A stretch of 64,000 bases of DNA from positions 310,001-374,000 of the IMG/VR virus record IMGVR_UViG_3300035661_000001; one strand, 5' to 3'. How positions within the stretch are numbered: position 1 is the first letter of the stretch; every line of letters begins with the position of its first letter. The position numbers and the translations under genes were made by a program. The notes beneath the pieces are model-generated. The model saw nothing but the letters and a program-made list of their open reading frames with translations. It ran no database searches and was not told where the DNA came from. This document shows, piece by piece, positions 48,190-62,016 of this stretch.

Positions 48190-48213
48190 AAATAATAATA
48201 CATTCGTAAACTG

Positions 48214-48258
48214 TAACCCTTGACATATAGTTTTTTAAACTTACCTTGTCAAGGGTTA
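48214..48258. repeat. 12-bp inverted repeat at the end of the structural operon; overlaps a sigma70-like promoter
   Basis: taacccttgaca...tgtcaagggtta; TTGACA (48220-48225)-N16-TACCTT on the plus strand. Confidence 0.65.
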
Positions 48259-48261
48259 TTT

Positions 48262-48534
48262 ATGAGAAAAAAGAGCGAGAGAAGAATTCCTATTCCTGAT
48301 ATAGTGTAGAATAAAGTAGAAGAAAAATTTGGCACAAATTTAAGATATACAGAGCCAAATACTGGTTATCCAGTACCAGTGATCAAATCTACAGAGTGGT
48401 CAGTGGGATTGAATATTAATTTTGCCCCATGGCTTTTTGTTTTTGATCAAAATGATAATACATATTTATTTCGCAGATTTAAATATTCAGAAAAAGAATT
48501 TCTTAGAGTGCTAGATTTGTTAATTTTTGTATAG
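48262..48534 (+). pseudogene. short ORF with in-frame TAG at codon 16; C-terminal LxxF-family member
   Basis: MRKKSERRIPIPDIV*NKVEEKFG...KYSEKEFLRVLDLLIFV*; the frame is otherwise open for 90 codons. Confidence 0.55.
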
Positions 48535-48573
48535 GAAAAAATCATTCCTGGTAATATTTGATCATATCTTAAT

Positions 48574-49317
48574 ATGGACAATTTAAAATGTATTAAGTGT
48601 GAAATAGAAAAAGAGCAAACTGAAGATAATTTTTATTATCGAAAAGACACTAATAAATGGAAGCCAGTTTGCAAAACTTGTTTGAGTGATAAAAACAAAA
48701 AAATATATGCAAACAATTCTGAAGATATAAAAACCAGATGTAATGTATATAGAGATAAAAATCGGAAAGTAATCAATACTAAAGCAAAAATTTACAATTC
48801 AAAACCCGATGTAAAATTAAGAAATAAAACTTATAGACAAGATAATAAAGTGGCTTTAAGAAAAAAAGAAAAAGCGTGGCGCCTCAAAAATCCAGAAAAA
48901 CACAAAGAAATTGCAAGAAAAAAATCTCAGAAACAAAACAAAAAGCCAATGTCAAAAATAAAACATCACATTTCTTGGTGTGTCAGTAAGGCTCTGATAA
49001 AGCAAAATACTTCAAAAGCAAACAAGTCAATAATTAATTATTTAGGTTATTCAATTCAAGAATTGAAAGAACATCTTGAAAAACAATTTGAATCATGGAT
49101 GACTTGGGATAATTATGGTGTTTATAAATTATCTTCTTGGAAAGATGATGATAAGTCTACATGGACTTGGCAAATAGATCACGTCATACCTCATTCGACG
49201 TTTAAGTATATTTCTATGAAAGATGGAGAATTTAAGAAGTGTTGGGCATTAGAAAACTTGAGACCATATTCCGCCAAACAGAATGTTTTGGATGGTGCAA
49301 ATAAAACGAGACATTAA
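48574..49317 (+). CDS. HNH-family homing endonuclease (copy 2)
   Basis: CxxC...CxxC, HLEKQFESWMTW...WQIDHVIP...CWALENLRPYSAKQN. Confidence 0.85.
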   Translation: MDNLKCIKCEIEKEQTEDNFYYRKDTNKWKPVCKTCLSDKNKKIYANNSEDIKTRCNVYRDKNRKVINTKAKIYNSKPDVKLRNKTYRQDNKVALRKKEKAWRLKNPEKHKEIARKKSQKQNKKPMSKIKHHISWCVSKALIKQNTSKANKSIINYLGYSIQELKEHLEKQFESWMTWDNYGVYKLSSWKDDDKSTWTWQIDHVIPHSTFKYISMKDGEFKKCWALENLRPYSAKQNVLDGANKTRH

Positions 49318-50442
49318 ATGAAAATTCTTATAAGACAATTCCTTGGAAAATCTCATAGCTGGAGCATCGTTGGTTGGGGTATCGCTAATGCTTTAATAAA
49401 AAACCATGATGTTCATTTGTTTTCTACGGATGGTATTAAACATACTCCTCAAAATTTAAAACCCTATGTAATAGGTTATACTGAAGAAAATGATCCCAAA
49501 GTTGTGGGAAGAATTCCTGATGCAGAATATGATTGCCAAATCAGCTATACTTGCATGAAAAATTTTCAATGGACATTGAGTAATGGGAACAAAAATAGAT
49601 TTGGCATTTGGTGCTATGAGTGGGCTGGTAAAAATGTATTACCAAATGGATTTGCAAAATCCTATCAATCTTGTGATCAAATCCTAGCTCCTAGCCAATT
49701 TGCAAAACAAGTTTTTATGGACTCAGGGGTTCCCGAATTTTCAATTAAAGTTATTTCTCATGGAATAAATTCTGAACAATATGTACAGAATACTACTATT
49801 AAACTTCCAACAAATAAAAAATACAAACTATTTGCAAACATAGCTCAACCTCATATTCGTAAAAATATTCCAGGGTTATTAAAAGCTTATGGTAAAGCTT
49901 TTAATAAACATGATGATGTTTGTTTAATTTTGAAATGTGGTAAAACACCCAAGAAAAGATTTGATTTCGAAGTAGCGTTTGATAAATGTTTACATGATTT
50001 TTACACGCAATTTCCAAATCATGCAGAAGTTAAAATTTTTGCCGATTTTGTTGAAGACATCTCGGCTCTTTATAGAAGTGTAGATACGGTAATCACATTG
50101 GCTCATTGTGAAGGATTTTATTTTCCGGGACTTGAAGCTCTTGCTTCTGGCAAATCAGTTATTGCTCCCAGGTGGGGAGGTCAATTAGATTTTCTGAATG
50201 ATAATAATGCTTTGCTCATTAATGGTAAAGAGTCTAGAGCTAATCCACAAAGCATGTATTGGGATAGTAAAAATAATGCAATTTGGTTTGAACCAGACAT
50301 TAATGATGCTGTTGATAAAATGAAATTTGCGTACCAAAATTACGAATCTTTGAATTCTAAATCAGAAGAGAATCGCCCCGCTATTTTAGAAAAATTTGAT
50401 TGGTCTATAATAACAAATCAAATTTTAGATTTATGTAAATAA
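49318..50442 (+). CDS. GT-B (GT4-like) glycosyltransferase
   Basis: PSQF...VISHGI, RKNIPGLLKAY, EGFYFPGLEALASGKSVI (E-x7-E signature). Confidence 0.9.
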   Translation: MKILIRQFLGKSHSWSIVGWGIANALIKNHDVHLFSTDGIKHTPQNLKPYVIGYTEENDPKVVGRIPDAEYDCQISYTCMKNFQWTLSNGNKNRFGIWCYEWAGKNVLPNGFAKSYQSCDQILAPSQFAKQVFMDSGVPEFSIKVISHGINSEQYVQNTTIKLPTNKKYKLFANIAQPHIRKNIPGLLKAYGKAFNKHDDVCLILKCGKTPKKRFDFEVAFDKCLHDFYTQFPNHAEVKIFADFVEDISALYRSVDTVITLAHCEGFYFPGLEALASGKSVIAPRWGGQLDFLNDNNALLINGKESRANPQSMYWDSKNNAIWFEPDINDAVDKMKFAYQNYESLNSKSEENRPAILEKFDWSIITNQILDLCK

Positions 50443-50458
50443 ATAATATTAAGGGTGC

Positions 50459-50487
50459 TTGACACCACTCGGGCTCGTACCTATAAT
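50459..50487 (+). promoter_or_regulatory. perfect-consensus sigma70 promoter
   Basis: TTGACA (50459-50464)-17 nt-TATAAT (50482-50487). Confidence 0.85.
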
Positions 50488-50497
50488 TGATAGACTA

Positions 50498-50728
50498 ATG
50501 AAAATGTTAACAAAAGAGCAGCATTTATTATTGAAAAAATTAAATGCTCGAAAAAATAACTGTCAAAAATCGTCCATTTGGTTTAATTGTGAGTTGAAAA
50601 TTATGATTGGTGATCACTGGGAATGTTTCATTTGCGGAGAAAAACCAGCTTTTAAATCAAGTTTACTTGAAATTGATGAACATGGACTTAATCATTTGAA
50701 AGAAAGTAATTTATTATCATTTATTTAA
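50498..50728 (+). CDS. small C2H2-like zinc-finger protein; C-terminal LxxF-family member
   Basis: Start moved to the ATG at 50498, downstream of the promoter; CFIC-x15-HGLNH; ends ESNLLSFI*. Confidence 0.6.
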   Translation: MKMLTKEQHLLLKKLNARKNNCQKSSIWFNCELKIMIGDHWECFICGEKPAFKSSLLEIDEHGLNHLKESNLLSFI

Positions 50729-51442
50729 TTATACATCGTATTTAACTTTCATTTGATACCCGTATTTGGAAAAACGATCGTCAAGATAGCGTGGCACATG
50801 AGTTAACTTATATGTTTGATATAAATTATATTTTCTATCTAAATAAATAGTTGCATTTTCATAAATCCATTCACAAAATTTTGATACTTGTCGACTACCT
50901 CCAAAATCTAACCGGCAAGTGTTACCTGTATATCTTTCCGGACAATATATTTGTGAATTAATATTTATTGTTTTAAATATATTTTGTAGATATATGTTGA
51001 ATTCTTTTGTTGACACAATACTTATATTAAGTTGATCTTGATGTATATTAATACAGCCATCACCATCAAAATATCCTCTTATAAAATGTTTAACTAATTG
51101 ATCATCTAGCCAACTTGGAAAAACTATATTAAAACTTTTTGCGCCGTGGCAGCCTTTTTCTTTTAAACTATTTGATAGTTTCCTACCATTTAGTTCTAAT
51201 CTATAAGCTTTATATTTTCCCTTGTTTTTTAATTGTAAAAATGGTTCACGTGGTTTACCAAAAAAATTGGCGCACTTGAAAAGATGCTCTTTATCACGTT
51301 CTTGTAATTCGATGATGATTTGTCCGGTTTTTTCTTTGTTGTATGCATCGGCATAAAAGAAACCTAGCCAATATGCTTTTTCTTCAGTATCGATATTATC
51401 CATCAAAATTTGATTTGTACAATATTTTGTTTTAAATGTCAT
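50729..51442 (-). CDS. free-standing LAGLIDADG homing endonuclease
   Basis: Two motifs, AYWLGFFYADAY and HFIRGYFDGDGCI; ends ...IYLDRKY. Confidence 0.85.
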   Translation of the reverse strand: MTFKTKYCTNQILMDNIDTEEKAYWLGFFYADAYNKEKTGQIIIELQERDKEHLFKCANFFGKPREPFLQLKNKGKYKAYRLELNGRKLSNSLKEKGCHGAKSFNIVFPSWLDDQLVKHFIRGYFDGDGCINIHQDQLNISIVSTKEFNIYLQNIFKTININSQIYCPERYTGNTCRLDFGGSRQVSKFCEWIYENATIYLDRKYNLYQTYKLTHVPRYLDDRFSKYGYQMKVKYDV

Positions 51443-51507
51443 GAAAGAATATTAAACTATGCCTAAGATTACCGAAGTAAAATTTATTTTTAATTGTGAG
51501 GTGTACA

Positions 51508-52374
51508 GTGCCGGAAGGGGTTGAGGTGCGAATAAGCAGTGAATTAATTAAACCATTAGTGCAAAGCAAATATATAAGCAAAATTCGTTTTGATGATGAT
51601 AGTAGATATGGTGGACCATATAAATCATCACCTGAAGGTTATGAAAAATTCGTGTCAACTTTTAGGAAATTGGAAAATATTGGATATGTCGTTGAGCCTT
51701 TAAAAATAATAGATGTAAAATGTAAAGGTAAATTCATGTACTGGCAATTTGATAATGGCTGGTATATGTACTGCACATTTGGTATGACAGGGCAATGGTC
51801 TCCAACAGCAGGCAAACATGTTTGTTTACATATGAAATTATACGACGATGAAGATAATTTTAGTAATGTGTATTTTAATGATCCTCGACATTTTGGAACA
51901 ATCAAATTTATAGAAACTGAGGCTGAATTAAAAGCCAAATTAAATGAATTAGGTTGGGACCCTTTATCTGGTTCTGTAGATAAATGGGTGCCTTGGTTAA
52001 AATCAGAATTAACAAAATCTAAAAAACCCATTGGTCAAGTATTATTAGACCAAGCAATATTTGCTGGTGTTGGTAATTATATTAGAGCAGAAGCTCTTTA
52101 TGCATCCCAGATCTCCCCGTGGAGAATCTCTAATACTCTCTCAGGGCAGGATACAGAGGTTTTGTGTAAAGCTATCGTCGATGTTATGGAAGAGTCTTAT
52201 AAATGGCAAGGAGCTACCTTGCTGACTTACAAAGACGCTTATGGTAATGAAGGGAAATACGCTTCTTGTTTTAAAGTGTATGGTAAAAAAATCGATCCTT
52301 TTGGTAATCTGATAAAATCAGAGCCAACACCAGATGGCAGAACTATTCATTGGTGCCCTACAATTCAAAAATAA
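51508..52374 (+). CDS. Fpg/Nei family DNA glycosylase/AP lyase, zincless-finger type
   Basis: GTG at 51508 after GAGGTG gives M-P-E-G (catalytic Pro2/Glu3); KGKFM, FGMTG, FNDPRHFG, H2TH LLDQAIFAGVGNYIRAE; C-terminal GRTIHWCPTIQK without a 4-Cys finger. Confidence 0.92.
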   Translation: MPEGVEVRISSELIKPLVQSKYISKIRFDDDSRYGGPYKSSPEGYEKFVSTFRKLENIGYVVEPLKIIDVKCKGKFMYWQFDNGWYMYCTFGMTGQWSPTAGKHVCLHMKLYDDEDNFSNVYFNDPRHFGTIKFIETEAELKAKLNELGWDPLSGSVDKWVPWLKSELTKSKKPIGQVLLDQAIFAGVGNYIRAEALYASQISPWRISNTLSGQDTEVLCKAIVDVMEESYKWQGATLLTYKDAYGNEGKYASCFKVYGKKIDPFGNLIKSEPTPDGRTIHWCPTIQK

Positions 52375-52450
52375 TTTATAAATTGTTTTGTTTTTTAAAT
52401 TCTGTAACGTGTAGATATAGAGGTAGCAAATCTTTTTATAAGAGAAAAAT

Positions 52451-53443
52451 ATGTCGTTATTAAATAAGATATTGATATTTTTAGGCGTTGCGGTTGTAAT
52501 CTTTGGATTAGGCTTTATTATATACAAGCAAAACGAAATTTCTAACCGTCAGTTAGCAATTGAAGCTCAAATGGTTGGTCAAAAAGAATTGGCTGACAAT
52601 ATTATGAGGTCCCAAAACGGATATGCCACTAAAGATGATATTGAAAAGTTTATTAAAAACAATAATGTAAATTTACAAGCTATTCAAGATGATTTAGACA
52701 AGCTACATGCTAGTTTAATTGCTGCCAATACTATTACTGTCAATAGCCGTGAACAAACGATTACTAATCTACCTAGTAGTGGAACTGGTAGTGTTAATGT
52801 ATCTCCAGTTACGACAGATGTATATGGATATTTGAAAAAAACCCAGCTATTAAATATACATGAAGATTTTAATGGAACCTCAGTACCAATTGGGCAAATT
52901 GGTTTTAGTGCTTGGCAACCTAAGCCTTGGGATATAAAAATTTCTCCCAGAGAATACAAAGTTACAAATATTATAGGAACAGACGATAATCAGCGCGTCT
53001 ATGTTTATAATAAATTCAGCGTTAAAGTTGAAGGTAAAGATTATGATGTAAAAATATCTGCAGCGGAAACTAAACAAGAATTTCCAGAAGCCAAGTGGAG
53101 CTGGTGGAACCCTCGTTTATTTGTTGGTGTAGATGGCGGTGTGAATATTGGTACTACAGCACTGCCAACTAATGGCAGTCGTGTAAAAGGAGAATTTACT
53201 CCCAATCTTAGTCTTGGTATAATGAGCTATGGTAAATTCAAGAATCAACCAGATTTCTCGGTATTACAAATAGGTGTTGGTGTAGGAACAGTCTCCCAAA
53301 AACCACAACTTATAGTCACTCCGGTAGCGTATAATATTGGTAAACATATTCCATTTGTAAATAATACTTATCTAGCACCCTCATTAGCAGTAGGGGTAGA
53401 TGGTTCTGTTTCCCTTATGGGCGGTGTAAGAGTAGGATTATAA
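52451..53443 (+). CDS. N-terminally membrane-anchored protein with coiled coil and C-terminal amphipathic beta-strands
   Basis: Hydrophobic residues 7-25, heptad region, alternating strands ending SLMGGVRVGL. Confidence 0.55.
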   Translation: MSLLNKILIFLGVAVVIFGLGFIIYKQNEISNRQLAIEAQMVGQKELADNIMRSQNGYATKDDIEKFIKNNNVNLQAIQDDLDKLHASLIAANTITVNSREQTITNLPSSGTGSVNVSPVTTDVYGYLKKTQLLNIHEDFNGTSVPIGQIGFSAWQPKPWDIKISPREYKVTNIIGTDDNQRVYVYNKFSVKVEGKDYDVKISAAETKQEFPEAKWSWWNPRLFVGVDGGVNIGTTALPTNGSRVKGEFTPNLSLGIMSYGKFKNQPDFSVLQIGVGVGTVSQKPQLIVTPVAYNIGKHIPFVNNTYLAPSLAVGVDGSVSLMGGVRVGL

Positions 53444-54396
53444 TGAGTAAAAAGAAAGTTTTAATTACAGGTTCGTGTGGTTTTGTAATTGGCAATTTAA
53501 TTAGAAAAGCTATTTATGAAAAACAGCCATATCAATTTGTTAGTGTAGATAAAGTAAGCGTAAATGCTTTAAATTCTATGTACTGGAATAAAAATCATAC
53601 TTTTCATATTGCTGACATAAGAGATCAACATGTAATTGATGTTATTTTTCAATTTGAAAAGCCGGATATTGTTATTCATGGTGCGGCGGCAACTTCTTTT
53701 GATGAAGACCCTAATAGCTTAGTAAGCTCCAATGTATTAGGCACACAAGTTATGATTAATGCGTGTATAAAACATAAAGTGGATAAATTAATTTACATTA
53801 GTACTGATGAGGTGTACGGTCAATTATCTAATGAATCAGATGATTCTTGGACCGAAGATTCTCCAATGAATCCTAGAAATTTTTATGCGGCTACAAAAGC
53901 GTCTGGAGAACTATTGATAAGGGCAGCTCATCAGTCACATGGATTAAAATACAATATTACTCGTAGCTCAAATAATTATGGTCCTCGTCAAACTCCAGAC
54001 AAACTGGTGCCAAAAATAATTAAATGCGTATTACAAGATAGTAAAATTCCGGTATATGGTCAAGGCTTACAAATTAGAGATTGGACCCACGTTTTTGATA
54101 ATTGTGGGGCTATATTGACTATTTTAAATAAAGGTGAAGATAATCAAATATATAATATCTCTTCAAATCAGGAGTTTACAAATATTGAAGTCGTACAACA
54201 CGTTTGTAATGTTTTAAGTAAAGGTCATAATTTGATTGAACATATTGTTGATCCACGCGGAAATGGACATGATTTCAGATACGGTGTAAATTCTACTAAA
54301 ATTCGTTCACTAGGCTGGGAGCCAAAATTTAAATTCAAAGATGGTATAGTAAGTACCACAGAATGGTTCCAGGTAAACCAGTGGTTTATTAAATAA
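53443..54396 (+). CDS. dTDP-glucose 4,6-dehydratase-like NAD-dependent epimerase/dehydratase (RmlB-like)
   Basis: VLITGSCGFVIG, STDEVYG, YAATK, SNNYGPRQ, YGQGLQIRDW, GHDFRY. Confidence 0.88.
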   Translation: MSKKKVLITGSCGFVIGNLIRKAIYEKQPYQFVSVDKVSVNALNSMYWNKNHTFHIADIRDQHVIDVIFQFEKPDIVIHGAAATSFDEDPNSLVSSNVLGTQVMINACIKHKVDKLIYISTDEVYGQLSNESDDSWTEDSPMNPRNFYAATKASGELLIRAAHQSHGLKYNITRSSNNYGPRQTPDKLVPKIIKCVLQDSKIPVYGQGLQIRDWTHVFDNCGAILTILNKGEDNQIYNISSNQEFTNIEVVQHVCNVLSKGHNLIEHIVDPRGNGHDFRYGVNSTKIRSLGWEPKFKFKDGIVSTTEWFQVNQWFIK

Positions 54397-54408
54397 AGAA
54401 CAATAAAT

Positions 54409-54663
54409 ATGTCATTAAAAATTACTCTTGAACTGCTAAAATTAGCACATGATCATATAGAGATCAAGACTGGTCCTTACAGTAAAGGTAAGCACGCTTT
54501 AACGTTAGAAAAAAATGAATTAATGTTAGTAATCAATACTGGACATGAATTCAAAAATTTCTTATTAGATGAGGCGGACTTATTAAAAAATCCATACGAT
54601 TTGATTATGGAAATTAAAAGGATAGTCGAAAAACCCTCCATTAACCTAAGTGAGTTAAATTAA
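54409..54663 (+). CDS. hypothetical protein
   Basis: 84-aa ORF tightly packed between neighbouring genes. Confidence 0.55.
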   Translation: MSLKITLELLKLAHDHIEIKTGPYSKGKHALTLEKNELMLVINTGHEFKNFLLDEADLLKNPYDLIMEIKRIVEKPSINLSELN

Positions 54664-54664
54664 T

Positions 54665-56020
54665 ATGCCAGTAGTGCATTCTATACAACACGATAACCCA
54701 GAAGAATTGGTTGACGATATGACAAACGAAAACGAAGAGAAAGAACAGCAAGATAAATTAGCCGCCCTAAAAGCGAAAAGCCAGGCAAAACAACAAGAAA
54801 AAGAAGGTAAGATGGCTTCAAAAATAGTAGCGAAGAAAGAAAGAAGTTTGAATTTAGGTATTCTTGGTTCAGGTCAAGCCGGATCAAGAATCGCAGAATC
54901 TTTCTATAAACTTGGATACGATTCAGTTGTAGTTAATACTGCTATGCAAGATCTTAAGTTTATTGACATTCCAGATTCTAATAAATTACTGCTTGAATAT
55001 GGTTTAGGTGGAGCTGCAAAAGAAATAGAGATTGGTCGGGCGGCGGCAGAAGCACACCGTGGCTCCATATTAGATCTTGTTAATGACAAATTAGCAAATT
55101 CGCAGGTCAATTTACTATGTCTTAGTTTAGGCGGCGGATCCGGAGCAGGATCATGTGAAACATTAGTAGATCTACTATCTGAATTAGGCAAGCCATTAGT
55201 TGTTATTACTGTGCTTCCAATGGATACGGAAGATTCTCAAACCAAAAGCAATGCCCTAGAGACTTTATCAAAATTAGCTAAATTAACACAATCTAAAAAG
55301 GTTAACAATTTGATTGTAGTAGACAATGCAAAGATAGAAGCAATTTTGCATGATGTTAGTCAGGTAGATTTTTATGGTACGGCGAATAAAGCTATTGTTG
55401 ATCCAATAGATGTTTTCAACACCTTATCTTCAATGGCTTCTTCTACTAAAGCATTAGATCCAATGGAATGGTCAAAACTTTTCATTGACGGAGAAGGTAT
55501 AAGCGTCTATGGCGAATTCTCTGTAGATAATTATCAAGAAGATACTGCTATCGCAGAAGCTGTTATTAACAATTTGTCCGGCAATCTTCTTGCTGAAGGT
55601 TTTGATCTTAAGCAATCAAAATATGTAGGATTCATTATTGCTGCAAATAAGACGGTTTGGTCTAAAATCCCAGCATCAAGCGTCAATTATGCAAGTAGCA
55701 TGATTAACGATCTTTGTGGAAATCCAAAAGGCGTGTTCAAGGGAATGTATATTGTTGATTCTCTTGAAGATACCGTAAAAGTATTCTCTATGTTTTCTGG
55801 TCTTGGACTTCCCGCAGGAAGAATTGAACAGTTAAAAAGCGAAACTAAAGAGCTACAATCAAAAGCTAAGAATAAAGATGATTCTAGAAATTTGACTTTA
55901 CAGCTTGATACTGGAACTAGTGAGACTGTGTCAGCGGCTCAAAAAATCAAAGAGAAGATTGCTCAGAAATCTTCAGCTTTTGGCAAATTAATGGGCGGAG
56001 TTGTTGATCGTCGTAAATAA
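54665..56020 (+). CDS. tubulin/FtsZ-family GTPase (PhuZ/TubZ-like)
   Basis: GSGQAGSRIA, VVVNT, GLGGAAKE, tubulin signature LGGGSGAG, VLP, VVDN; the start could be 54665 or an internal ATG. Confidence 0.88.
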   Translation: MPVVHSIQHDNPEELVDDMTNENEEKEQQDKLAALKAKSQAKQQEKEGKMASKIVAKKERSLNLGILGSGQAGSRIAESFYKLGYDSVVVNTAMQDLKFIDIPDSNKLLLEYGLGGAAKEIEIGRAAAEAHRGSILDLVNDKLANSQVNLLCLSLGGGSGAGSCETLVDLLSELGKPLVVITVLPMDTEDSQTKSNALETLSKLAKLTQSKKVNNLIVVDNAKIEAILHDVSQVDFYGTANKAIVDPIDVFNTLSSMASSTKALDPMEWSKLFIDGEGISVYGEFSVDNYQEDTAIAEAVINNLSGNLLAEGFDLKQSKYVGFIIAANKTVWSKIPASSVNYASSMINDLCGNPKGVFKGMYIVDSLEDTVKVFSMFSGLGLPAGRIEQLKSETKELQSKAKNKDDSRNLTLQLDTGTSETVSAAQKIKEKIAQKSSAFGKLMGGVVDRRK

Positions 56021-56039
56021 AACTGTAATTTAAATGAAA

Positions 56040-56078
56040 ATCTCGGTCTTCTGATATATTTTGTCAGAAGACCGAGAT
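56040..56078. repeat. 15-bp inverted repeat with TGATATAT at the stem/loop junction (terminator and/or promoter hairpin)
   Basis: atctcggtcttctga-tatattttg-tcagaagaccgagat, followed by a T-run. Confidence 0.75.
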
Positions 56079-56084
56079 ATTTTT

Positions 56085-57542
56085 ATGAATGAAATTGTCG
56101 TTTTAAATAACAAAAAATGCGTCATCAAATCAGAGGACACAGAACTATTAAAAAAAGTAAAGAATTTTCTGTCGTTTAAAATGGCAGGAGCAGAGTATTC
56201 ACCGGCTTATCAAAATGGCTGGAATGGTATAACATATTTATTAACTAAAACTAATAAATTTGATTTGGGATTGTTATCCAAAGTAGAGAATTTTCTCACA
56301 GAAAAAGGTTTTGAATATCAAGTCACGGATACTCGTGCCCCCGTGCAATTTAATGAGCCTTTGGCTATTTCTGATAACTTAAAAAAACACGGATTCATAC
56401 CACGTGACTATCAGTTAAAAATGCTAGACGTAGCAATGAAGAACAATAAAGGAATTGTTCGAGCTTGTACGGGTGCGGGCAAAACACTTACTATTGCAAT
56501 GATTACGGCTCAACTAAATAAGCCGACTATGATTTATGTTATTGGATTGGATTTATTAGATCAATTTCACAAGTTATTCAGCAAACTATTTAATGAAAAA
56601 ATAGGTTACATTGGAAACGGCACTGTAGATATTGCACGAATAAATATCGCATCTATATGGACCGTTGGTAAGGCTTTAAAAATAGACAATCCAATTACTG
56701 ATGCTGAAGAATTAAATGATGGAGAAGTTTTTGTAGAAAGCAATAGAGATAAAATTGTAAATGCTCTCAAAGAATCTAAAGTTAGTTTTTTTGATGAGTC
56801 ACACGTTTGTACAACCAATACTATTTCTACAATTTATAAAAACATTAACCCTGAACATATCTACGGATTTAGCGGAACGCCATTTAGAGATGACGGCTCT
56901 GATCTTTTAATAAACGGTATTCTTGGAGAGCAAATTATTAATGTATCAGCCTCTGAATTAATAGACAAAGGTGTTCTAGCTAGACCGCTGATTAAATTCG
57001 TATCTGTGCCTAAAATGAGTTGTTCGGGACAATATCTTTCTGTGTATAAAGATTACATAGTGGAAAATGAAATAAGAAATAATCTTATTGTAGAGAACAC
57101 TAAATCTTTAATAGATAAAAAATATACTCCGCTAGTATTGTTTAAACAAATCAAACATGGAGAAATTATCTATCAAAAATTATTGGATGCAGGAATATTA
57201 TGCGCCATTTTGCATGGCAATGACGATTTGGAAAGACGACAAGAAGTAAAAGATCAATTGGTTAATGGTGAAATTCAAGCTATTGTAGCAAGTACTATTT
57301 TTGATATTGGTTTAGATTTACCACAACTAAGCGGATTAGTATTATGTGGTGGTGGTAAAAGTACCATCAGATGTTTACAGAGAGTTGGACGTGTACTTAG
57401 AATGGTGCCAGGTAAAAAATTTGCCGCTGTTATAGATTTTTATGACCAAGCAAAATTTTTAAAAAAACATGCACAGCTTCGGCACGCCACCTATGCATCT
57501 GAGCCTGGCTTTAAAGTAATAAAATCCAAGGAAATGAAGTAA
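56085..57542 (+). CDS. SF2 DNA helicase, UvsW-like
   Basis: PRDYQ, TGAGKT, DESH, SGTPFR, GLDLP, QRVGRVLR; likely start is the ATG at 56085, because the listed TTG lies inside the hairpin. Confidence 0.88.
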   Translation: MNEIVVLNNKKCVIKSEDTELLKKVKNFLSFKMAGAEYSPAYQNGWNGITYLLTKTNKFDLGLLSKVENFLTEKGFEYQVTDTRAPVQFNEPLAISDNLKKHGFIPRDYQLKMLDVAMKNNKGIVRACTGAGKTLTIAMITAQLNKPTMIYVIGLDLLDQFHKLFSKLFNEKIGYIGNGTVDIARINIASIWTVGKALKIDNPITDAEELNDGEVFVESNRDKIVNALKESKVSFFDESHVCTTNTISTIYKNINPEHIYGFSGTPFRDDGSDLLINGILGEQIINVSASELIDKGVLARPLIKFVSVPKMSCSGQYLSVYKDYIVENEIRNNLIVENTKSLIDKKYTPLVLFKQIKHGEIIYQKLLDAGILCAILHGNDDLERRQEVKDQLVNGEIQAIVASTIFDIGLDLPQLSGLVLCGGGKSTIRCLQRVGRVLRMVPGKKFAAVIDFYDQAKFLKKHAQLRHATYASEPGFKVIKSKEMK

Positions 57543-57544
57543 AT

Positions 57545-57572
57545 TTGACGAACTGCTATTCGGCGTTACATT
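57545..57572 (+). promoter_or_regulatory. sigma70-like promoter
   Basis: TTGACG-16 nt-TACATT, ending 21 nt upstream of the ATG at 57594. Confidence 0.55.
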
Positions 57573-57593
57573 GTAAGTACGTAAATACATACC

Positions 57594-57965
57594 ATGTCAA
57601 AACTTAATAATATTGGAATTATTCATAATGATTTTTATAAAGAACAATCAATTAATAATGTTATTAATGAAATAGAAATTTATATTATTCATCCTTTTCC
57701 AAAATTAGAAGTAATACAATTACCAAATATTTATATTAATCATAGCGCGTTAGCTGACGAGTTTTCAGAAAATGGCATTATGTATTTTTATGATCTTAAA
57801 ATTTGTAAAACAGATTTAGAAGAGTTGGTAACTCTGCGTCAATTCAAAAATGTCATGTTACTTAAAATGGAACATGATTTTTTGTTTGCTGACATGACCA
57901 TGTCTAAATTTTTAGAAGTAGCTAACAAAACTCGTCGGAAATCAAATCTGAAATTATTTTGGTGA
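57594..57965 (+). CDS. hypothetical protein; C-terminal LxxF-family member
   Basis: 123 aa ending RKSNLKLFW*. Confidence 0.6.
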   Translation: MSKLNNIGIIHNDFYKEQSINNVINEIEIYIIHPFPKLEVIQLPNIYINHSALADEFSENGIMYFYDLKICKTDLEELVTLRQFKNVMLLKMEHDFLFADMTMSKFLEVANKTRRKSNLKLFW

Positions 57966-57968
57966 TCA

Positions 57969-58145
57969 ATGCCTAAGAAAAAAGAAATAGATTTAACAGG
58001 AGGAATTTTAAATGAAGTTCCTAATGAATATTATAAGAAATTTTTCGATAAGTTCGAAGAGATAAAAATATTAGAAATTGAAAAATGGAAACCTGTACAT
58101 ATTTTTGTAATGATATATGGAAACAAAAATATGTACAATTTGTAA
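57969..58145 (+). pseudogene. orphan N-terminal fragment paralogous to the 58901 gene
   Basis: MPKKKEIDLTGGILNEVPNEYYKKFFDKFEEIKILEIEKWKPVHIF... aligns with ...GAPNEKYEKFFKKFEEVSILDPSSWSVTHLL of 58901; similarity stops at the HNH start. Confidence 0.75.
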
Positions 58146-58911
58146 TGACGAAAAAGATATTGAAGAATTTTTACTTAGAACTGATTCGGGAACTCGCCGA
58201 AAATCTTGCAAAAAATGCTACAATAGTAAAGTTACAAATTATAAGAAAATTAACAAAGATATTATTTCATTAAAAAATAAAAAATATCAAGAAATAAATA
58301 AAGACAGTAGAAGAACATACAGAAAAAAATATCACACAAATAATAAAGATCGTGAAAATACCCGTAGTATTAATTATGCAAATTCTAATCAAGAAAAAAT
58401 AGCAAGTTATCAAAAATCGTATAGGAATGATCATGTCGAAAAAATTAGCACTTATGGTATAGAGTATCGTAAAAAAAATAAAGATAAATTAAATAAAAAA
58501 CAAAGAATTTATTCAAAAACAAGAAAGAGCATTGACCCAGCATTCAAATTAAGATCTAGATTTTCAACTAGCATATGGATATCCTTAAATTCAAATAATA
58601 GTACTAAAAATGGAAATTCTATATTAAAATATCTTCCTTATTCTATACAAGAATTAAAAGAATATTTAGAAAAACAATTTGAGCACTGGATGAATTGGAA
58701 TAATTGGGGAAGATTTTCTAAATCATGGGATGATAATAATTTAAAAACATGGAAATGGCAAATAGATCATATTATTCCTCAAAGTATTTTACCATATACA
58801 TCTATGGAAGATAGTAATTTCAAGAAGTGTTGGGCATTAGAAAACTTAAGACCTTATTCTGCAAAATAAAATGTATTAGATGGAGTAACTAAAATAAGAC
58901 ATGAAAAATGA
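58117..58911 (+). pseudogene. HNH homing endonuclease (copy 3) with premature TAA at 58867-58869
   Basis: ...LRPYSAK*NVLDGVTKIRHEK*; the other two copies read YSAKQNVLDG / YSSKQNFLDG at this position. Confidence 0.8.
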
Positions 58912-59491
58912 TAATATCAATATAAAATTAGAAGGAGCGCCCAATGAAAAATACGAAAAATTTTTTAAAAAATTCGAAGAGGTATCTATCTTAGATCCAT
59001 CTTCTTGGAGTGTAACTCATCTTTTAGGATATTTTTGTAAAAAATATAAAGAGCAATATCAAACAGATTATAAATTCAAATTCAATAGTCCCACACCATC
59101 CAAATGTTTTGAGGTTTTTCAAATCAAAAAACTAGCAATGAATTTAACAGCCGATCCATTTTTGTTAAAAGAATATATTGATTGGGTGTATGATAATAAA
59201 GTTGTTAAAGCCAAAAGAAAATTAACTTCTATTTCTTTCATGACTAATGAAGGTGTCGTGAATGAATATAAAATAAATGTTCTTTTATCGAATGATAGGG
59301 AATCAAGTATAGATCGATCTGCATTTTTGCCTGAAAAATACAAAAATGTATTTGAAGAAATAGGTATGACCATTAATACTTATGGTGAATTAGCATTCAT
59401 TCATCAAATGGATGACGAAAAGGTAGCTGCGGCTTTTTCAAGAATAGAATTAATTGGTTTTGATAAGTCTAAATTAGAAAATATTGTATGA
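58901..59491 (+). CDS. hypothetical protein, possibly replication initiator-associated
   Basis: 196 aa, helical; located upstream of the DnaC-like and DnaB genes. Function inferred from position only. Confidence 0.5.
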   Translation: MKNDNINIKLEGAPNEKYEKFFKKFEEVSILDPSSWSVTHLLGYFCKKYKEQYQTDYKFKFNSPTPSKCFEVFQIKKLAMNLTADPFLLKEYIDWVYDNKVVKAKRKLTSISFMTNEGVVNEYKINVLLSNDRESSIDRSAFLPEKYKNVFEEIGMTINTYGELAFIHQMDDEKVAAAFSRIELIGFDKSKLENIV

Positions 59492-59880
59492 TATTGGTTA
59501 ATTGTAACTCTTCAGAATATTTAGATGAAGTGGGATATATTTTTCCAACTGATATTTTTGATATGATTCCATTATTGTATACTACAGAGTTTATTAAATG
59601 TAGTGATACTAATGTGAATTATTTACACACTGTTGTTAGAACCAAAATTGAAGAAAAATCGCAATGGGATTTAACTTGGGGCAGACCATTATCATGGTCT
59701 GGTCCATATGATAAATTGAAAAATTTGAATAAAGTAATTGTTTTCTATATGGAATCAGATGATTTGACAAAAAATGAAATGAAAGATATCGTTTTTTGTG
59801 TTGTATGTTCTGAACAATATACAAAAGAACAATTATTAACAATTATGAAGAGATATTCAAAATTGAAGGTGTTTTTATGA
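59488..59880 (+). CDS. hypothetical protein; C-terminal LxxF-family member
   Basis: 130 aa, ATGA-coupled at both ends, ending YTKEQLLTIMKRYSKLKVFL*. Confidence 0.6.
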   Translation: MILVNCNSSEYLDEVGYIFPTDIFDMIPLLYTTEFIKCSDTNVNYLHTVVRTKIEEKSQWDLTWGRPLSWSGPYDKLKNLNKVIVFYMESDDLTKNEMKDIVFCVVCSEQYTKEQLLTIMKRYSKLKVFL

Positions 59881-60278
59881 TTCCACAAAAAGGAAGTCAC
59901 GTTAAGTGTGTAATGCGTAATAATTTAGTTTTGGAGGGAGTTGTAGAGTCATGGTCAGATGATCAGTCTATATTACGATCTTTAGATGACTCATCTCTTT
60001 CTATTATACAGCACTCCTTGGAAGATATAGTGGTGATCAAGGTTATCCTTAAAAAGCCCCTTCAAACAAAAAAAGAATTAGAAATAAAATTTGAAGAAGA
60101 GGTTAAGAAGCCGAGCGATGATAATCTGAGATTGAAAAACATAGTAGAATTAAAAAATATGTTAAATAATCAAGAAAAGAAAATTATCGCAGAGAATTTG
60201 AAAAATCATCATATTGGAGAGATTAAGAAAATAAATTATGGACAACCTGGATTTTTCCCGAAGCCGAGCATTAAATAA
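59877..60278 (+). CDS. hypothetical protein with possible Sm/Hfq-like N-terminal fold and coiled-coil tail
   Basis: GSHVKCVMRNNLVLEGVVESWSDDQSILRS resembles the Sm1 motif. Confidence 0.45.
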   Translation: MIPQKGSHVKCVMRNNLVLEGVVESWSDDQSILRSLDDSSLSIIQHSLEDIVVIKVILKKPLQTKKELEIKFEEEVKKPSDDNLRLKNIVELKNMLNNQEKKIIAENLKNHHIGEIKKINYGQPGFFPKPSIK

Positions 60279-62016
60279 TATTCCAAAAAGAAAGCTGCAT
60301 GAAAAACTCGCAGAAATTTCTAGTACTGACGAAGATATTAAGATAAAAAATGTCAAATTAATTGCGATAAATAGATATGCAGAAAGCAATATTCCAATTG
60401 AATATTGGGGGTTGAAGATGGAAAAAGATTTCACCGGAGACCAAAGATTATTAACAAAATACAACGAGTATTGTGCGGATTTAAAACAATCTTATCGAGA
60501 TGGTGTTTCTATTTGTTTTGCTGGTGGACATGGAAGAGGCAAGCAATTATCATTAGATACAGAATTGCCTACCCCTAATGGTTTTATTAAACTTATGGAT
60601 TTAAAAGAAGGTGATAAATTATTTGATGAGCAAGGTAACATATGTAATGTATTGCAGCTTCATCCCATTAATTTATCGCCTGAATCATATCAAATAGAAT
60701 TTGATGATGGTACAAAAGTGGAGGCTTGCGCTGATCATTTATGGTTTACTTGGGATAGCGCTTCTCGCAAATCATATCAGCGTTCTAAAAATCCAACTAT
60801 TCATCCTCAAGTACGAAATACCAAAGAAATTTTGAAAACTTTAATTTCTAAAGGTAAACGCGGAAAAAATCATTCAATACCATGTATTAAACCTGTTAAT
60901 TATTCTGAAAAAAAACTATTAGTTGATCCCTATGTTTTAGGGTGTTGGTTAGGTGATGGAGAAACAAATTCTGGAGCTATCGAATGTGCTGATCAAGATA
61001 TTTTAACAGAAATTCAAAATGTCGGATATTCTGTTAATTTAACAGAATCTTCGCAACTTCATAATTCTAAATCTCGTCGGTATAGAATTGGTGATTTAAT
61101 AGATATTAAAATAAAAAATACGCCACATAAGATCGGCTTGCTATGTCAACAATTAAAACAGATTAATGTATTAAATAATAAACATGTTCCTGATGAATAT
61201 TTATATTCATCATATGAACAAAGACTATCTTTAATTCAAGGATTAATGGATACTGATGGTTGTTGTTTGAATACTGGAGTAATGGAATATTGTACAGTAC
61301 TACCAGAATTAGCAAAACAAATACAACAGCTAATTCATAGTATGGGAATAAAATGTTCTTTGCACAAAAATGAATCTTGGTTGTATGATAAACGATGCAA
61401 AGATCGATACAGAATAAAAATTATTACACAATTACCAATTTTTAGATTAAAAAGAAAGCTAAAAAACATTAGATTGAAAAAGAATCAATTAGCAAAAACT
61501 ACGCATAGATATATTGTTAATATAATTCCCATTGATCCTAAACCAATGAGATGTATTACAGTAGATAGTCCTAATCATTTATTTTTAATCACAAGATCTT
61601 TTATTCCAACACATAACACTATGGCAGTTAGTTGTATTCTCAAGAAGGCTTGTGGTAAAAACTTTTCATGTCTTTATACTACACTGACAGATATTGTGAA
61701 TACATTAACACAAGCATCAGGTGATGATAAATATCTGGCTCGCCGAGAATTATCTTTGATAGATTTTTTGGTCATTGATGAGTTTGATCCAAGATTTATG
61801 CCTTCTGAAAATGCAGCGGATTTATACGCTCGAAGTCTAGAAGGTATTTTCAGGGCTAGAAGCCAAAATAAACTTCCTACATTAATGTGTACTAATAGTC
61901 CTAACGTAGTTAAGTCATTTCATGGAGCATTGCAGGAAAGCATAGATTCTTTGATGAAAGGTTATTTAACAGTGTTTCCAGTATTCGGTGATGATTTTAG
62001 AAAGAAAGGCTTATGA
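60238..62016 (+). CDS. DnaC/IstB-like AAA+ helicase loader containing an intein
   Basis: Walker A GGHGRGK|T split by the intein; Walker B FLVIDE, R...LPTLMCTN; directly upstream of DnaB. Spliced extein is 234 aa. Confidence 0.85.
   Translation: MDNLDFSRSRALNNIPKRKLHEKLAEISSTDEDIKIKNVKLIAINRYAESNIPIEYWGLKMEKDFTGDQRLLTKYNEYCADLKQSYRDGVSICFAGGHGRGKQLSLDTELPTPNGFIKLMDLKEGDKLFDEQGNICNVLQLHPINLSPESYQIEFDDGTKVEACADHLWFTWDSASRKSYQRSKNPTIHPQVRNTKEILKTLISKGKRGKNHSIPCIKPVNYSEKKLLVDPYVLGCWLGDGETNSGAIECADQDILTEIQNVGYSVNLTESSQLHNSKSRRYRIGDLIDIKIKNTPHKIGLLCQQLKQINVLNNKHVPDEYLYSSYEQRLSLIQGLMDTDGCCLNTGVMEYCTVLPELAKQIQQLIHSMGIKCSLHKNESWLYDKRCKDRYRIKIITQLPIFRLKRKLKNIRLKKNQLAKTTHRYIVNIIPIDPKPMRCITVDSPNHLFLITRSFIPTHNTMAVSCILKKACGKNFSCLYTTLTDIVNTLTQASGDDKYLARRELSLIDFLVIDEFDPRFMPSENAADLYARSLEGIFRARSQNKLPTLMCTNSPNVVKSFHGALQESIDSLMKGYLTVFPVFGDDFRKKGL
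60544..61617 (+). mobile_element. class 3 intein (Gln1) with LAGLIDADG endonuclease, 358 aa
   Basis: Starts QLSLDTELPTPNG; block B ACADHLW; LGCWLGDG and LIQGLMDTDG; block F MRCITVD; ends IPTHN followed by Thr+1. Confidence 0.9.

What the first reader, a model, noticed from the sequence alone, without database searches (positions are those of the whole stretch)
54665..56020. Phage tubulin with a charged N-terminal arm and a possible membrane-targeting C-terminal helix
Seen: a tubulin/FtsZ GTPase core, a ~55-aa charged N-terminal extension, and a C-terminal coiled segment ending KSSAFGKLMGGVVDRRK. Established: PhuZ positions the replication compartment of nucleus-forming jumbo phages, and MinD-type targeting helices end in F..L.GG. 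Inference: a spindle or segregation filament that may anchor itself to the membrane, encoded directly upstream of the replication genes.
Basis: partly seen in the sequence, partly recalled or inferred. Interest (0 to 1): 0.6.

Follow-up and report, generated by a model that had tools for sequence, protein, structure and literature searches.

The report
Orphan TubZ-type tubulin of a megaphage
This gene in a 452-kb environmental phage encodes a filament-forming tubulin related to plasmid-segregating TubZ, not to the PhuZ spindle of nucleus-forming phages, and its conserved arm and tail look more like partner-binding pieces than a membrane anchor.

Summary
Window 54665-56020 (+) is an intact 451-aa tubulin/FtsZ GTPase with a ~60-aa N-terminal extension and the quoted C-terminal tail.

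By sequence, Pfam domains and predicted fold the protein is TubZ/RepX-type, not PhuZ. The complete 452-kb genome (terminal repeats) has no chimallin and no multisubunit RNA polymerase, so nothing suggests a phage nucleus. It also lacks the TubZ partners: no TubR-like gene, no centromere repeats nearby, no MerR/TubY, no integrase or ParB.

The protein belongs to a family of >1,290 sequences, many on 430-500 kb contigs. The epimerase-tubulin-UvsW gene order is kept across the viral loci examined.

The basic N-helix (31-48) and the tail (421-451) are under purifying selection at least as strong as the core. The fixed tail residues are S437, F439, G440, D448 and R450. The "GG" behind the MinD analogy varies, and membrane-partitioning energy is weak and not conserved. 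Plasmid TubZ tails, which bind the next subunit, TubR-centromere and TubY, carry similar K-S/L-x-F-G motifs.

Most likely this is a cytomotive filament that moves or positions phage DNA or particles through an unidentified partner. Membrane binding is neither shown nor excluded.

The parts
54665..56020 (+). Tubulin gene, 451 aa (P0001), TubZ-type
   Evidence: ORF; Pfam PF00091 + PF22453; PDB sequence best hit RepX 4ei7, E 4e-14 over residues 54-398; Foldseek best hits TubZ 2xkb/2xka/4ei7, E about 1e-24.
54665..54754 (+). Residues 1-30: acidic, fast-evolving N-terminal tip (net charge -9)
   Evidence: Charge; mean frequency of the commonest residue 0.54; changed-amino-acid to synonymous codon ratio 5.9; length-variable in alignment A1.
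54755..54850 (+). Residues 31-62: conserved basic helix (KLAALKAKSQAKQQ...) and linker KMA.KIV.KKERS leading into strand S1
   Evidence: Conservation 0.84 and 0.81, equal to the core; codon ratio 0.30; predicted helix 24-48 at low pLDDT; motif kept in members of 42-64% identity.
54851..55354 (+). Residues 63-230: GTP-binding domain with T1 loop GSGQAG (54866-54883) and T4 signature GGGSGAG (55130-55150)
   Evidence: Pfam PF00091; motifs; invariant columns; pLDDT 84-97.
55355..55813 (+). Residues 231-383: helix H7, T7-type loop L-D-P-M-E (55454-55468) and the TubZ-like C-terminal domain
   Evidence: Pfam PF22453; D265 and E268 invariant and aligned with D..E of RepX.
55814..55894 (+). Residues 384-410: long C-terminal helix (H11-like), as in TubZ
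   Evidence: AF2 helix 384-410; TubZ structures align over about 375-405 columns, FtsZ over only about 326.
55925..56017 (+). Residues 421-451: basic conserved tail (net +6). It has an amphipathic helix 421-435, the motif S-x-F-G-K-[LF] (437-442; 55973-55990), a variable MGGVV segment and a terminal D-R-R-K (56006-56017).
   Evidence: Conservation 0.84 / 0.84 / 0.63 / 0.92; S437, F439, G440, D448 and R450 at 1.00; codon ratio 0.26; similar motifs in RepX, Pontibacillus and Brevibacillus TubZ tails.
56040..56084 (+). Terminator-like hairpin (17-bp stem, 5-nt loop) followed by ATTTTT, 20 nt after the tubulin stop codon
   Evidence: Scan and sequence. It overlaps the TTG start listed for the helicase ORF, so ATG 56085 is the likelier helicase start.
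54409..54663 (+). orf84, directly upstream; not a TubR and not a conserved partner
   Evidence: Found in only 5 of 63 related loci; AF2 pLDDT 85, alpha-beta3-alpha2 order, not winged-helix; no PDB match; no family hit.
53443..54396 (+). NAD-dependent sugar epimerase/dehydratase, the conserved upstream neighbour
   Evidence: Pfam PF01370, E 3e-48; found upstream of the tubulin in all 63 related loci (a cut fragment where the contig ends), abutting it (gaps of tens of bases) in most.
56061..57542 (+). UvsW-type helicase, the conserved downstream neighbour at variable distance
   Evidence: Pfam ResIII, Helicase_C and UvsW_N; distance from the tubulin is 9-2840 nt in relatives.

Best explanation
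The gene encodes an orphan TubZ-type cytomotive tubulin of a large environmental phage that does not form a nucleus.

Shown here:
- The GTP-binding and GTPase-activating motifs are intact, so head-to-tail GTP-dependent polymerisation with hydrolysis is expected.
- The fold and C-terminal domain are those of plasmid TubZ/RepX.
- It is the only tubulin gene in a complete 452-kb genome.
- The usual TubZ partners (TubR, tubC iterons, TubY) and the PhuZ context (chimallin, phage RNA polymerases) are absent.
- A basic N-terminal helix and a basic C-terminal tail are conserved as strongly as the core.

Inferred:
- The tail works as TubZ tails are known to work. It is a flexible peptide that contacts the next subunit in the filament and recruits a partner through a short motif (K-S-S-x-F-G-K-[LF] ... 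D-R-R-K).
- The partner here is an unidentified phage or host factor, or possibly DNA bound directly by the basic arm and tail.
- The filament positions or transports replicating phage DNA or assembling particles during lytic growth in the host cell.
For: Family assignment:
- Pfam Tubulin + TubZ-like_C.
- RepX is the best solved sequence relative, over nearly the full length.
- Nineteen TubZ chains top the fold search (E about 1e-24, 375-405 aligned columns), ahead of CetZ and FtsZ. PhuZ-type viral models reach only about 1e-11 to 1e-12.
- Catalytic and nucleotide motifs are invariant.

Importance to the phage:
- More than 1,290 homologues, many on 430-500 kb contigs.
- Synteny in 63 viral loci.
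- In two relatives a homing intein sits in the T1 loop, the kind of site inteins occupy in indispensable proteins.

Orphan status:
- Single tubulin gene.
- No TubR-like protein by phmmer or HMM.
- No MerR.
- No repeat array within about 6 kb.
- orf84 is neither conserved nor a winged helix.
- By contrast, all six plasmid and phage-G relatives examined have a 90-120 aa ORF immediately upstream.

Tail as a recognition motif:
- Invariant S437, F439, G440, D448 and R450 down to 42% overall identity.
- Codon ratio 0.26.
- Comparable K-[SL]-x-F-G motifs in RepX, Pontibacillus and Brevibacillus tails.
- Published roles of the TubZ tail in subunit contact and in TubRC and TubY binding (PMC5322520, PMC7762940).

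Lytic rather than plasmid lifestyle: terminal repeats, no integrase, no ParB.
Against: - No partner was identified.
- The complex prediction of tail against core gave no verdict.
- The arm and tail are modelled at low confidence.
- The similarity of tail motifs to plasmid TubZ rests on three sequences and was not tested statistically.
- No expression data: no RNA run holds the gene.
- The host is unknown. The only clue is a related contig binned in a Bacteroidia MAG.
- The cargo (DNA, capsids or something else) is pure inference by analogy with TubZ and PhuZ.
- Absence of TubR rests on sequence searches with six very divergent small proteins. A structurally similar but unrecognisable adaptor elsewhere in the 452 kb cannot be excluded.
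Confidence: 0.5

Rival explanations
1. Self-anchoring membrane filament: the C-terminal FGKLMGG segment folds into an amphipathic helix that inserts into the inner membrane. Polymer avidity then tethers the filament, so it pushes or pulls against the membrane.
For: - Hydrophobic moment of FGKLMGGVVDR is 0.60, similar to E. coli MinD's tail (0.53), with a net positive charge.
- MinD's real tail, KKGFLKRLFGG, does resemble AFGKLMGG.
- In type III systems TubY's lysine-rich amphipathic tail binds membranes only when oligomeric, and the basic TubZ tail is described as somewhat similar (PMC7762940).
Against: - The GG is not conserved (0.49 and 0.77), and 443-447 is the least conserved part of the tail (0.63).
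- The invariant residues are S, F, G, D and R, a pattern typical of a recognition motif.
- The best 8-mer Wimley-White energy is -0.83 kcal/mol, against -1.56 for MinD and -2.22 for FtsA. It ranges from -0.16 to -1.67 across the clade.
- The 42%-identity member has a polar, proline-containing insert after FGKL.
- The FtsZ peptide, which binds proteins and not lipid, scores the same moment (0.53), so the measure does not discriminate.
Confidence: 0.17
2. Canonical type III partition of a plasmid-like carrier state, as in Clostridium phage c-st: a TubR adaptor and centromere exist elsewhere in the genome, and the tubulin segregates phage genomes into daughter cells.
For: TubZ-type fold and tail. 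Published suggestions that jumbo-phage tubulins act in pseudolysogeny (PMC7824862).
Against: - No TubR-like gene found, no MerR/TubY, no iterons near the gene, no integrase or ParB.
- The genome ends in direct terminal repeats, typical of a virion-packaged linear genome.
- All canonical relatives keep tubR immediately upstream. The megaphage loci do not: none of those neighbours' homologues is found, and orf84, the only ORF in that position, is in 5 of 63 loci.
Confidence: 0.1
3. Host-division interference: the phage tubulin co-assembles with or competes against host FtsZ, or its tail mimics the FtsZ C-terminal peptide, to block division and enlarge the infected cell.
For: - The N-terminal domain matches many FtsZ structures at about 1e-8.
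- The overall layout (core, linker, conserved peptide, basic end) recalls FtsZ.
- Database annotations call it FtsZ.
Against: - No FtsZ_C domain was found; the C-terminal domain is TubZ-like.
- FtsZ structures align over only about 326 columns, against about 400 for TubZ.
- The tail lacks the P-x-F-L-R core of the E. coli FtsZ peptide (DIPAFLRKQ) and has Gly after Phe.
Confidence: 0.08
4. PhuZ-like spindle around an unrecognised, non-chimallin compartment: the phage builds some other replication compartment and the tubulin centres it.
For: Very large genome; a single conserved tubulin next to replication genes.
Against: - No chimallin by two profiles, with a working positive control.
- No phage multisubunit RNA polymerase, which all known nucleus-forming phages need.
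- No PhuZ C-terminal domain.
- The tail is basic, whereas PhiKZ PhuZ ends in an acidic stretch.
Confidence: 0.08

Closest known systems
TubZ / RepX of Bacillus plasmids (pBtoxis TubZ, pXO1-like RepX; PDB 2xka, 2xkb, 3j4s, 4ei7)
   Same: Tubulin GTPase domain plus a TubZ-type C-terminal domain, a long terminal helix and a flexible basic tail. These are the best sequence and fold matches. The tails carry K-[SL]-x-F-G-type motifs.
   Different: - Only 18-27% identity.
- No upstream TubR, no tubC iterons, no TubY.
- An extra ~55-aa N-terminal arm with a conserved basic helix.
- Encoded by a 452-kb virion-packaged phage, not a low-copy plasmid.
TubZ of Clostridium botulinum phage c-st (PDB 3v3t, 4xcq)
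   Same: A phage-encoded TubZ whose flexible C-tail governs filament contacts and partner binding (PMC5322520). It matches at E about 5e-5.
   Different: c-st is a plasmid prophage with tubR, tubC and tubY, and its tail is acidic (PMC5322520). Here the tail is basic and the partners are missing.
PhuZ of Chimalliviridae (PhiKZ gp39, 201phi2-1 gp59)
   Same: A phage tubulin without TubR, probably used during lytic growth. The GTPase domain is recognisably related (hhalign probability 91.5% over 120 columns).
   Different: - Different C-terminal domain: PF22334 in PhuZ, PF22453 here.
- PhuZ is about 320 aa, has no N-terminal arm and has an acidic tail.
- The chimallin and multisubunit RNA polymerase genes found in PhuZ-encoding phages such as PhiKZ are absent here.
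Bacillus phage G gp138 (FtsZ/tubulin-like GTPase)
   Same: The only relative in the GenBank phage collection (23.5% identity, E 1e-15). Also from a ~500-kb phage without a nucleus system. Its function is unstudied (PMC12484599).
   Different: 376 aa, no N-terminal arm and a different tail. It has a 98-aa winged-helix-like gene (gp137) directly upstream.
MinD / FtsA membrane-targeting helices and the TubY tail
   Same: Short, basic, C-terminal, potentially amphipathic segment with a comparable hydrophobic moment.
   Different: Weaker and non-conserved hydrophobic drive. Residue identity is conserved, not the hydrophobic pattern. The GG is variable.

Membership tests
Tubulin/FtsZ superfamily | GTP-binding T1 loop and T4 signature G-G-G-[ST]-G-x-G | tested here: met
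   GSGQAG at 68 and GGGSGAG at 156; invariant in 24 sequences; PF00091 above its cut-off.
Tubulin/FtsZ superfamily | T7-loop acidic residues that complete the neighbour's active site (polymerisation-dependent GTPase) | tested here: met
   L-D265-P-M-E268 after helix H7. Both acidic residues are invariant and aligned with D..E of RepX. GTPase activity itself was not measured.
TubZ protein family | TubZ-type C-terminal domain and a long terminal helix followed by a flexible tail | tested here: met
   PF22453 above its cut-off; helix 384-410 then a low-confidence tail; TubZ and RepX top both the sequence and fold searches.
Type III (TubZRC) partition system | Small winged-helix centromere-binding protein TubR encoded next to tubZ | tested here: not met
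   orf84 is in only 5 of 63 loci and is not a winged helix. In most other clade members the epimerase gene abuts the tubulin gene. No TubR-like ORF anywhere in the genome by phmmer or HMM.
Type III (TubZRC) partition system | tubC centromere: an array of iterons near the operon | tested here: not met
   No multi-copy direct-repeat family within 48000-60000; only two-copy chance-level pairs. The rest of the genome was not scanned for iterons.
Type III (TubZRC) partition system | TubY (MerR-type regulator with an amphipathic tail), present in many systems | tested here: not met
   No PF13411 match in the genome, while 14 of 14 control genomes ring.
PhuZ / Chimalliviridae spindle | PhuZ C-terminal domain (Pfam PF22334) | tested here: not met
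   PhiKZ PhuZ hits PF22334 at 1.7e-37; P0001 does not. hhalign covers only the GTPase domain.
PhuZ / Chimalliviridae spindle | Co-occurrence with chimallin and two split multisubunit RNA polymerases | tested here: not met
   phrog_4795 and PF25677: no match, with a positive control of 1.8e-232 on PhiKZ. phrog_3015 and phrog_3295: no match, though they ring in 10-14 control genomes.
PhuZ / Chimalliviridae spindle | Acidic C-terminal tail that docks on the next subunit | tested here: not met
   The tail here has net charge +6. The PhiKZ PhuZ tail ends in D/E-rich residues. Docking itself gave no verdict.
FtsZ | FtsZ C-terminal domain and a conserved C-terminal peptide (P-x-F-L-R-type) that binds FtsA/ZipA | tested here: not met
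   No FtsZ_C family among the Pfam hits. The tail has S-x-F-G-K, against DIPAFLRKQ in E. coli FtsZ.
MinD-type membrane-targeting sequence | C-terminal amphipathic helix whose hydrophobic face is conserved | tested here: inconclusive
   The hydrophobic moment is comparable (0.60 against 0.53). Partition energy is weaker and variable, and positions 443-447 are poorly conserved.
MinD-type membrane-targeting sequence | Binds lipid bilayers and localises a reporter to the membrane | not testable with these tools
   Needs liposome co-sedimentation and GFP-tail localisation experiments.

The most novel reading that the evidence does not exclude
A one-protein segregation machine. In this megaphage clade the TubZ filament has dispensed with TubR and tubC and binds its cargo itself. 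The conserved lysine-rich N-terminal helix (KLAALKAKSQAKQQ) and/or the basic tail would bind phage DNA, or the membrane, directly. If so, a single polypeptide is both motor and adaptor for moving half-megabase genomes in the cell.
Probability: 0.15. Interest if true: 0.7.

Novelty: new variant of a known kind. Interest (0 to 1): 0.45.

Why it matters
Phage tubulins are known from two settings. PhuZ centres the chimallin nucleus, and TubZ with TubR and tubC partitions plasmid prophages. This protein fits neither. It is a TubZ-fold tubulin, widespread in 430-500 kb environmental phages, that has no nucleus genes and no centromere adaptor. It carries two extra conserved peptides whose partners are unknown.

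Finding what those peptides bind would show how very large phages without a nucleus organise replication or assembly in the cell. It would also show how a cytomotive filament can be re-wired to new cargo. For annotation, it shows that 'PhuZ', 'FtsZ' or 'CetZ' labels on megaphage tubulins should not be read as evidence of a phage nucleus.

Tried and rejected
- **Complex prediction** (two core copies 57-400 with GTP, plus the tail 401-451 as partner): score 0.17, below the 0.32 mark, no verdict. It counts neither for nor against tail docking.
- **Maximum-likelihood tree** of 19 tubulins (megaphage clade, RepX-likes, phage G, PhiKZ PhuZ, E. coli FtsZ): outgroup branches of 4-8 substitutions per site and 10 of 16 forks open. 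It cannot place the clade. No CetZ, pBtoxis TubZ or c-st TubZ sequence was at hand. Classification therefore rests on profile, PDB and fold searches.
- **orf84 as TubR:** rejected.
- **TubR, TubY or a tail-mimic elsewhere in the genome:** none found.
- **Expression:** no RNA run holds the gene.
- **Bacterial and archaeal genome scan:** only one related contig (in a Bacteroidia MAG) and one fragment.
- **Literature:** I found no description of this clade's tubulin and no report of natural inteins in tubulin/FtsZ genes, in limited searches.
- **Exhaustive representative-protein search:** not run. The operators marked it costly, and the word search plus family scans had already settled the family.
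- no alternative genetic code was needed; table 11 gives dense coding throughout.
Full report
**1. The observation**

Window 54665-56020 (+) is an uninterrupted 451-codon ORF starting with ATG.
- Pfam finds the tubulin/FtsZ GTPase domain at residues 66-228 (E 7e-15) and a TubZ-like C-terminal domain at 252-391 (E 6.6e-7), both above the curated cut-offs.
- The nucleotide-binding T1 loop (GSGQAG, 68), the T4 signature (GGGSGAG, 156) and a T7-type L-D-P-M-E (264) are present and invariant in the family.
- The best solved relative aligns from query residue 54 to its own residue 8. So about 50-60 residues are an additional N-terminal arm.

**2. The genome**

The window is bases 310001-374000 of a 451,956-bp IMG/VR virus record with direct terminal repeats, rated 100% complete.
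- GC is 36.5%, and coding is dense under table 11. TAG is a rare but used stop codon, so no recoding is indicated.
- Near-identical DNA occurs in microbial-mat and sediment metagenomes. More distant matches are in freshwater metagenomes. No RNA run holds it.
- Upstream of the tubulin lie a contractile-tail module (sheath, baseplate wedge, very large proteins), a glycosyltransferase, a LAGLIDADG endonuclease, an Fpg/Nei glycosylase, an unknown protein with a hydrophobic N-terminus (read by eye, not tested), and a sugar epimerase.
- Downstream lie a UvsW-type helicase, an HNH endonuclease and a DnaB-type helicase.

**3. What kind of tubulin**

- By sequence, the best solved relative is RepX, the TubZ of pXO1-like Bacillus plasmids (4ei7, E 4e-14 over residues 54-398). 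Next come many FtsZ N-terminal domains (about 1e-8), c-st phage TubZ (5e-5) and B. thuringiensis TubZ (2e-3, near full length).
- An AlphaFold2 model built from 24 family members is confident for residues 63-392.
- Its 19 best PDB matches are all TubZ chains (E about 1e-24, 375-405 aligned columns). CetZ and FtsZ follow, FtsZ over about 326 columns. PhuZ is not in the top 50.
- Among predicted viral structures, only a member of its own clade matches strongly. PhuZ-type proteins reach about 1e-11 to 1e-12.
- PhiKZ PhuZ carries Pfam PF22334. This protein carries PF22453 instead. A profile comparison with PhuZ covers only 120 columns of the GTPase domain.
- A small maximum-likelihood tree was too poorly resolved to add anything.

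**4. The nucleus-forming hypothesis**

- The genome has a single tubulin gene.
- It has no chimallin by the PHROG or the Pfam profile. The PHROG profile finds PhiKZ chimallin at 1.8e-232 as a positive control.
- Two PhiKZ RNA-polymerase subunit profiles also find nothing, although they ring in 10-14 control bacteria.
- The PhuZ context is therefore absent. This fits published remarks that phages above 500 kb lack the nucleus system (PMC12625630).

**5. The canonical TubZ context is absent too**

- Six relatives were examined: B. cereus, Pontibacillus, Brevibacillus, Cetobacterium and Vallitalea plasmids, and Bacillus phage G. All have a 90-120 aa ORF immediately upstream of the tubulin. Several have recognisable winged-helix character, and B. 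cereus also has the MerR-type TubY.
- In the megaphage clade the epimerase gene abuts the tubulin gene in most loci.
- The 84-aa ORF upstream in this window occurs in only 5 of 63 related loci. It folds confidently as alpha-beta3-alpha2 with no structural match, so it is not a winged helix.
- Searches of all stop-to-stop ORFs of the genome with the six TubR-like proteins, and with an HMM built from them, found nothing.
- There is no MerR-family gene, no iteron array within about 6 kb, no integrase and no ParB.
- A 17-bp hairpin followed by ATTTTT sits 20 nt after the tubulin stop codon.
- In relatives the gap to the helicase is 9-2840 nt and holds varying genes. So linkage to the replication genes is positional, not operonic.

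**6. The family and its conserved extras**

- A word-based search found more than 1,290 homologues. The best 120 are 73-88% identical, and many lie on 430-500 kb contigs.
- Sixty-three viral loci carry the gene in the same gene order.
- In 35 sequences filtered to below 85% identity, the mean frequency of the commonest residue is:

| Segment | Residues | Conservation |
|---|---|---|
| GTPase domain | 63-230 | 0.85 |
| C-terminal domain | 231-383 | 0.82 |
| Acidic N-tip | 1-30 | 0.54 |
| Basic N-helix | 31-48 | 0.84 |
| Tail helix | 421-436 | 0.84 |
| Tail motif | 437-442 | 0.84 |
| MGGVV segment | 443-447 | 0.63 |
| Terminal DRRK | 448-451 | 0.92 |

- Codon comparison with 17 orthologues gives changed-to-synonymous codon ratios of 0.30 for the N-helix and 0.26 for the tail. 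The core gives 0.48 and the N-tip 5.9.
- The arm is therefore translated. Both peptides are under purifying selection at least as strong as that on the enzyme itself.
- Members of only 42-64% identity keep L-x-x-L-[KR]-A-K in the arm, and S-x-F-G-[KQ]-[LF] ... [VI]-D-[RK]-R in the tail.

**7. Membrane helix or recognition motif?**

- However, G444 and G445 are the commonest residue in only 49% and 77% of relatives. S437, F439, G440, D448 and R450 are invariant.
- The hydrophobic moment (0.60) does not discriminate. MinD gives 0.53, and the protein-binding FtsZ peptide also gives 0.53.
- The best 8-residue Wimley-White interfacial energy is -0.83 kcal/mol, against -1.56 for MinD and -2.22 for FtsA. 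It varies from -0.16 to -1.67 within the clade.
- The most divergent member has a polar, proline-containing insert after FGKL.
- Selection thus appears to act on residue identity and not on lipid partitioning.
- Tails of plasmid TubZ relatives carry similar short motifs: RepX KKKLNFG and KKKLSF, Pontibacillus KKSLFG and KKSLFD, Brevibacillus KSSGFG.
- Published work shows that TubZ tails are flexible, contact the upper subunit in the filament, and bind TubR-tubC and TubY (PMC5322520).
- It also shows that membrane binding in these systems has been demonstrated for TubY's lysine-rich tail, and only when TubY is oligomeric (PMC7762940).
- I therefore rate a partner- or subunit-binding role for the tail as more likely than direct membrane anchoring. 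I keep the latter at about 0.17, because a polymer would supply avidity.
- My one complex prediction, tail against two core copies with GTP, returned no verdict and is not evidence either way.

**8. Most likely mechanism**

Shown:
- an intact TubZ-type polymerising GTPase;
- a single copy in a complete genome of virion-packaged form (direct terminal repeats, no integrase or ParB);
- conserved gene order across the 63 viral loci examined;
- two conserved basic peptides;
- none of the known partner genes.

Inferred:
- GTP-driven filaments that use the tail, and perhaps the N-helix, to contact neighbouring subunits and an unidentified adaptor or cargo;
- a role in positioning or moving replicating phage DNA or assembling particles.

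Confidence that it is a TubZ-type filament former is about 0.9. Confidence in the whole statement is about 0.5. The rivals are a membrane anchor, a canonical partition system with a hidden TubR, interference with host FtsZ, and a PhuZ-like spindle around an unknown compartment. Each is listed with its evidence.

**9. Novelty**

- Tubulins in jumbo phages outside the Chimalliviridae have been noted. Phage G's gene has been described only by annotation (PMC12484599), and 'two distinct representatives' of the family in jumbo phages have been mentioned (PMC7824862). The huge-phage survey simply labelled such genes PhuZ (PMC7162821).
- I found no description of this clade, its arm or its tail.
- It is best called a new variant of a known kind. 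The protein is a TubZ-family member. The system fails the defining tests of both the type III partition system and the PhuZ spindle.

**10. Side finding**

In two related loci, L040 and L054, the orthologous gene is interrupted exactly after GQAG of the T1 loop by an insertion of about 470 aa. The insertion begins with Cys, contains LAGLIDADG blocks, and ends in H-N followed by Ser. L040's was confirmed by Pfam as an intein with a homing endonuclease.

Noticed in passing
L040:2366-5137 and L054:2447-5251 (related viral loci, not the window): The orthologous tubulin gene carries an intein of about 470 aa with a LAGLIDADG homing endonuclease. It is inserted exactly after GQAG of the GTP-binding T1 loop (Cys at +1 of the intein, ...THN|S at the end). 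For L040, Pfam finds Intein_splicing 1.8e-11, LAGLIDADG_3 and Hom_end. A limited literature search found no report of natural inteins in tubulin/FtsZ genes.
   Followed up: partly
window 56040-56084 and 56061-56087: A terminator-like hairpin (17-bp stem) plus a T-run directly follows the tubulin gene. It overlaps the TTG start listed for the UvsW helicase ORF, so the helicase more likely starts at ATG 56085.
   Followed up: partly
window 57969-59491: An HNH endonuclease gene (58117-58869) sits between a 58-aa ORF (57969-58145) and the 196-aa ORF (58901-59491). The starts of those two ORFs share a 68-nt repeat at 71% identity (58008-58075 and 58928-58995). It looks like a homing-endonuclease insertion beside a duplicated gene start.
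   Followed up: no
window 60238-62016: A 592-aa ORF just upstream of the DnaB-type helicase has a LAGLIDADG domain in its middle (residues 327-398) and no other family hit. It may be another intein-bearing replication gene.
   Followed up: no
window 50729-51442 (-): A LAGLIDADG endonuclease gene is the only convincing minus-strand gene in a long run of plus-strand genes. Together with the HNH and intein-like elements, it shows this region is rich in homing elements.
   Followed up: no
window 54809-54814 (upstream of codon 50): Met50 is conserved (0.89) and is preceded by a GAAGG Shine-Dalgarno-like sequence. A shorter isoform lacking the N-terminal arm is conceivable. The arm itself is clearly under protein-level selection.
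   Followed up: partly
window 51496-52374: An Fpg/Nei-type DNA glycosylase (H2TH and the N- and C-terminal domains) is encoded by the phage. It was found in 28 of the 63 related loci; in others the fetched flank is too short to tell.
   Followed up: no
window 7236-48189: Very large structural-region ORFs (1965, 1632, 1361, 2376 and 1179 aa) lie beside the tail sheath (14137-16908). The 1361-aa ORF (33425-37510) has a baseplate-wedge domain at its N-terminus. Most have no PHROG match. The 1179-aa protein has a dockerin-like repeat.
   Followed up: no
L071 (JBMOGB010000001.1, 171,750-bp contig of a Bacteroidia MAG): The only substantial relative in 185,579 species genomes (47% identity) lies on a long contig binned with a Bacteroidia MAG. 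This is probably a mis-binned phage contig, and it is a weak clue that hosts may be Bacteroidota.
   Followed up: no
related loci, between the tubulin and UvsW genes (e.g. L052:6949-7845): In 28 related loci a gene of about 298 aa occupies the gap between the tubulin and the helicase. From its N-terminal sequence it looks like a GH25-type muramidase. It is absent from this window and was not scanned against families.
   Followed up: no
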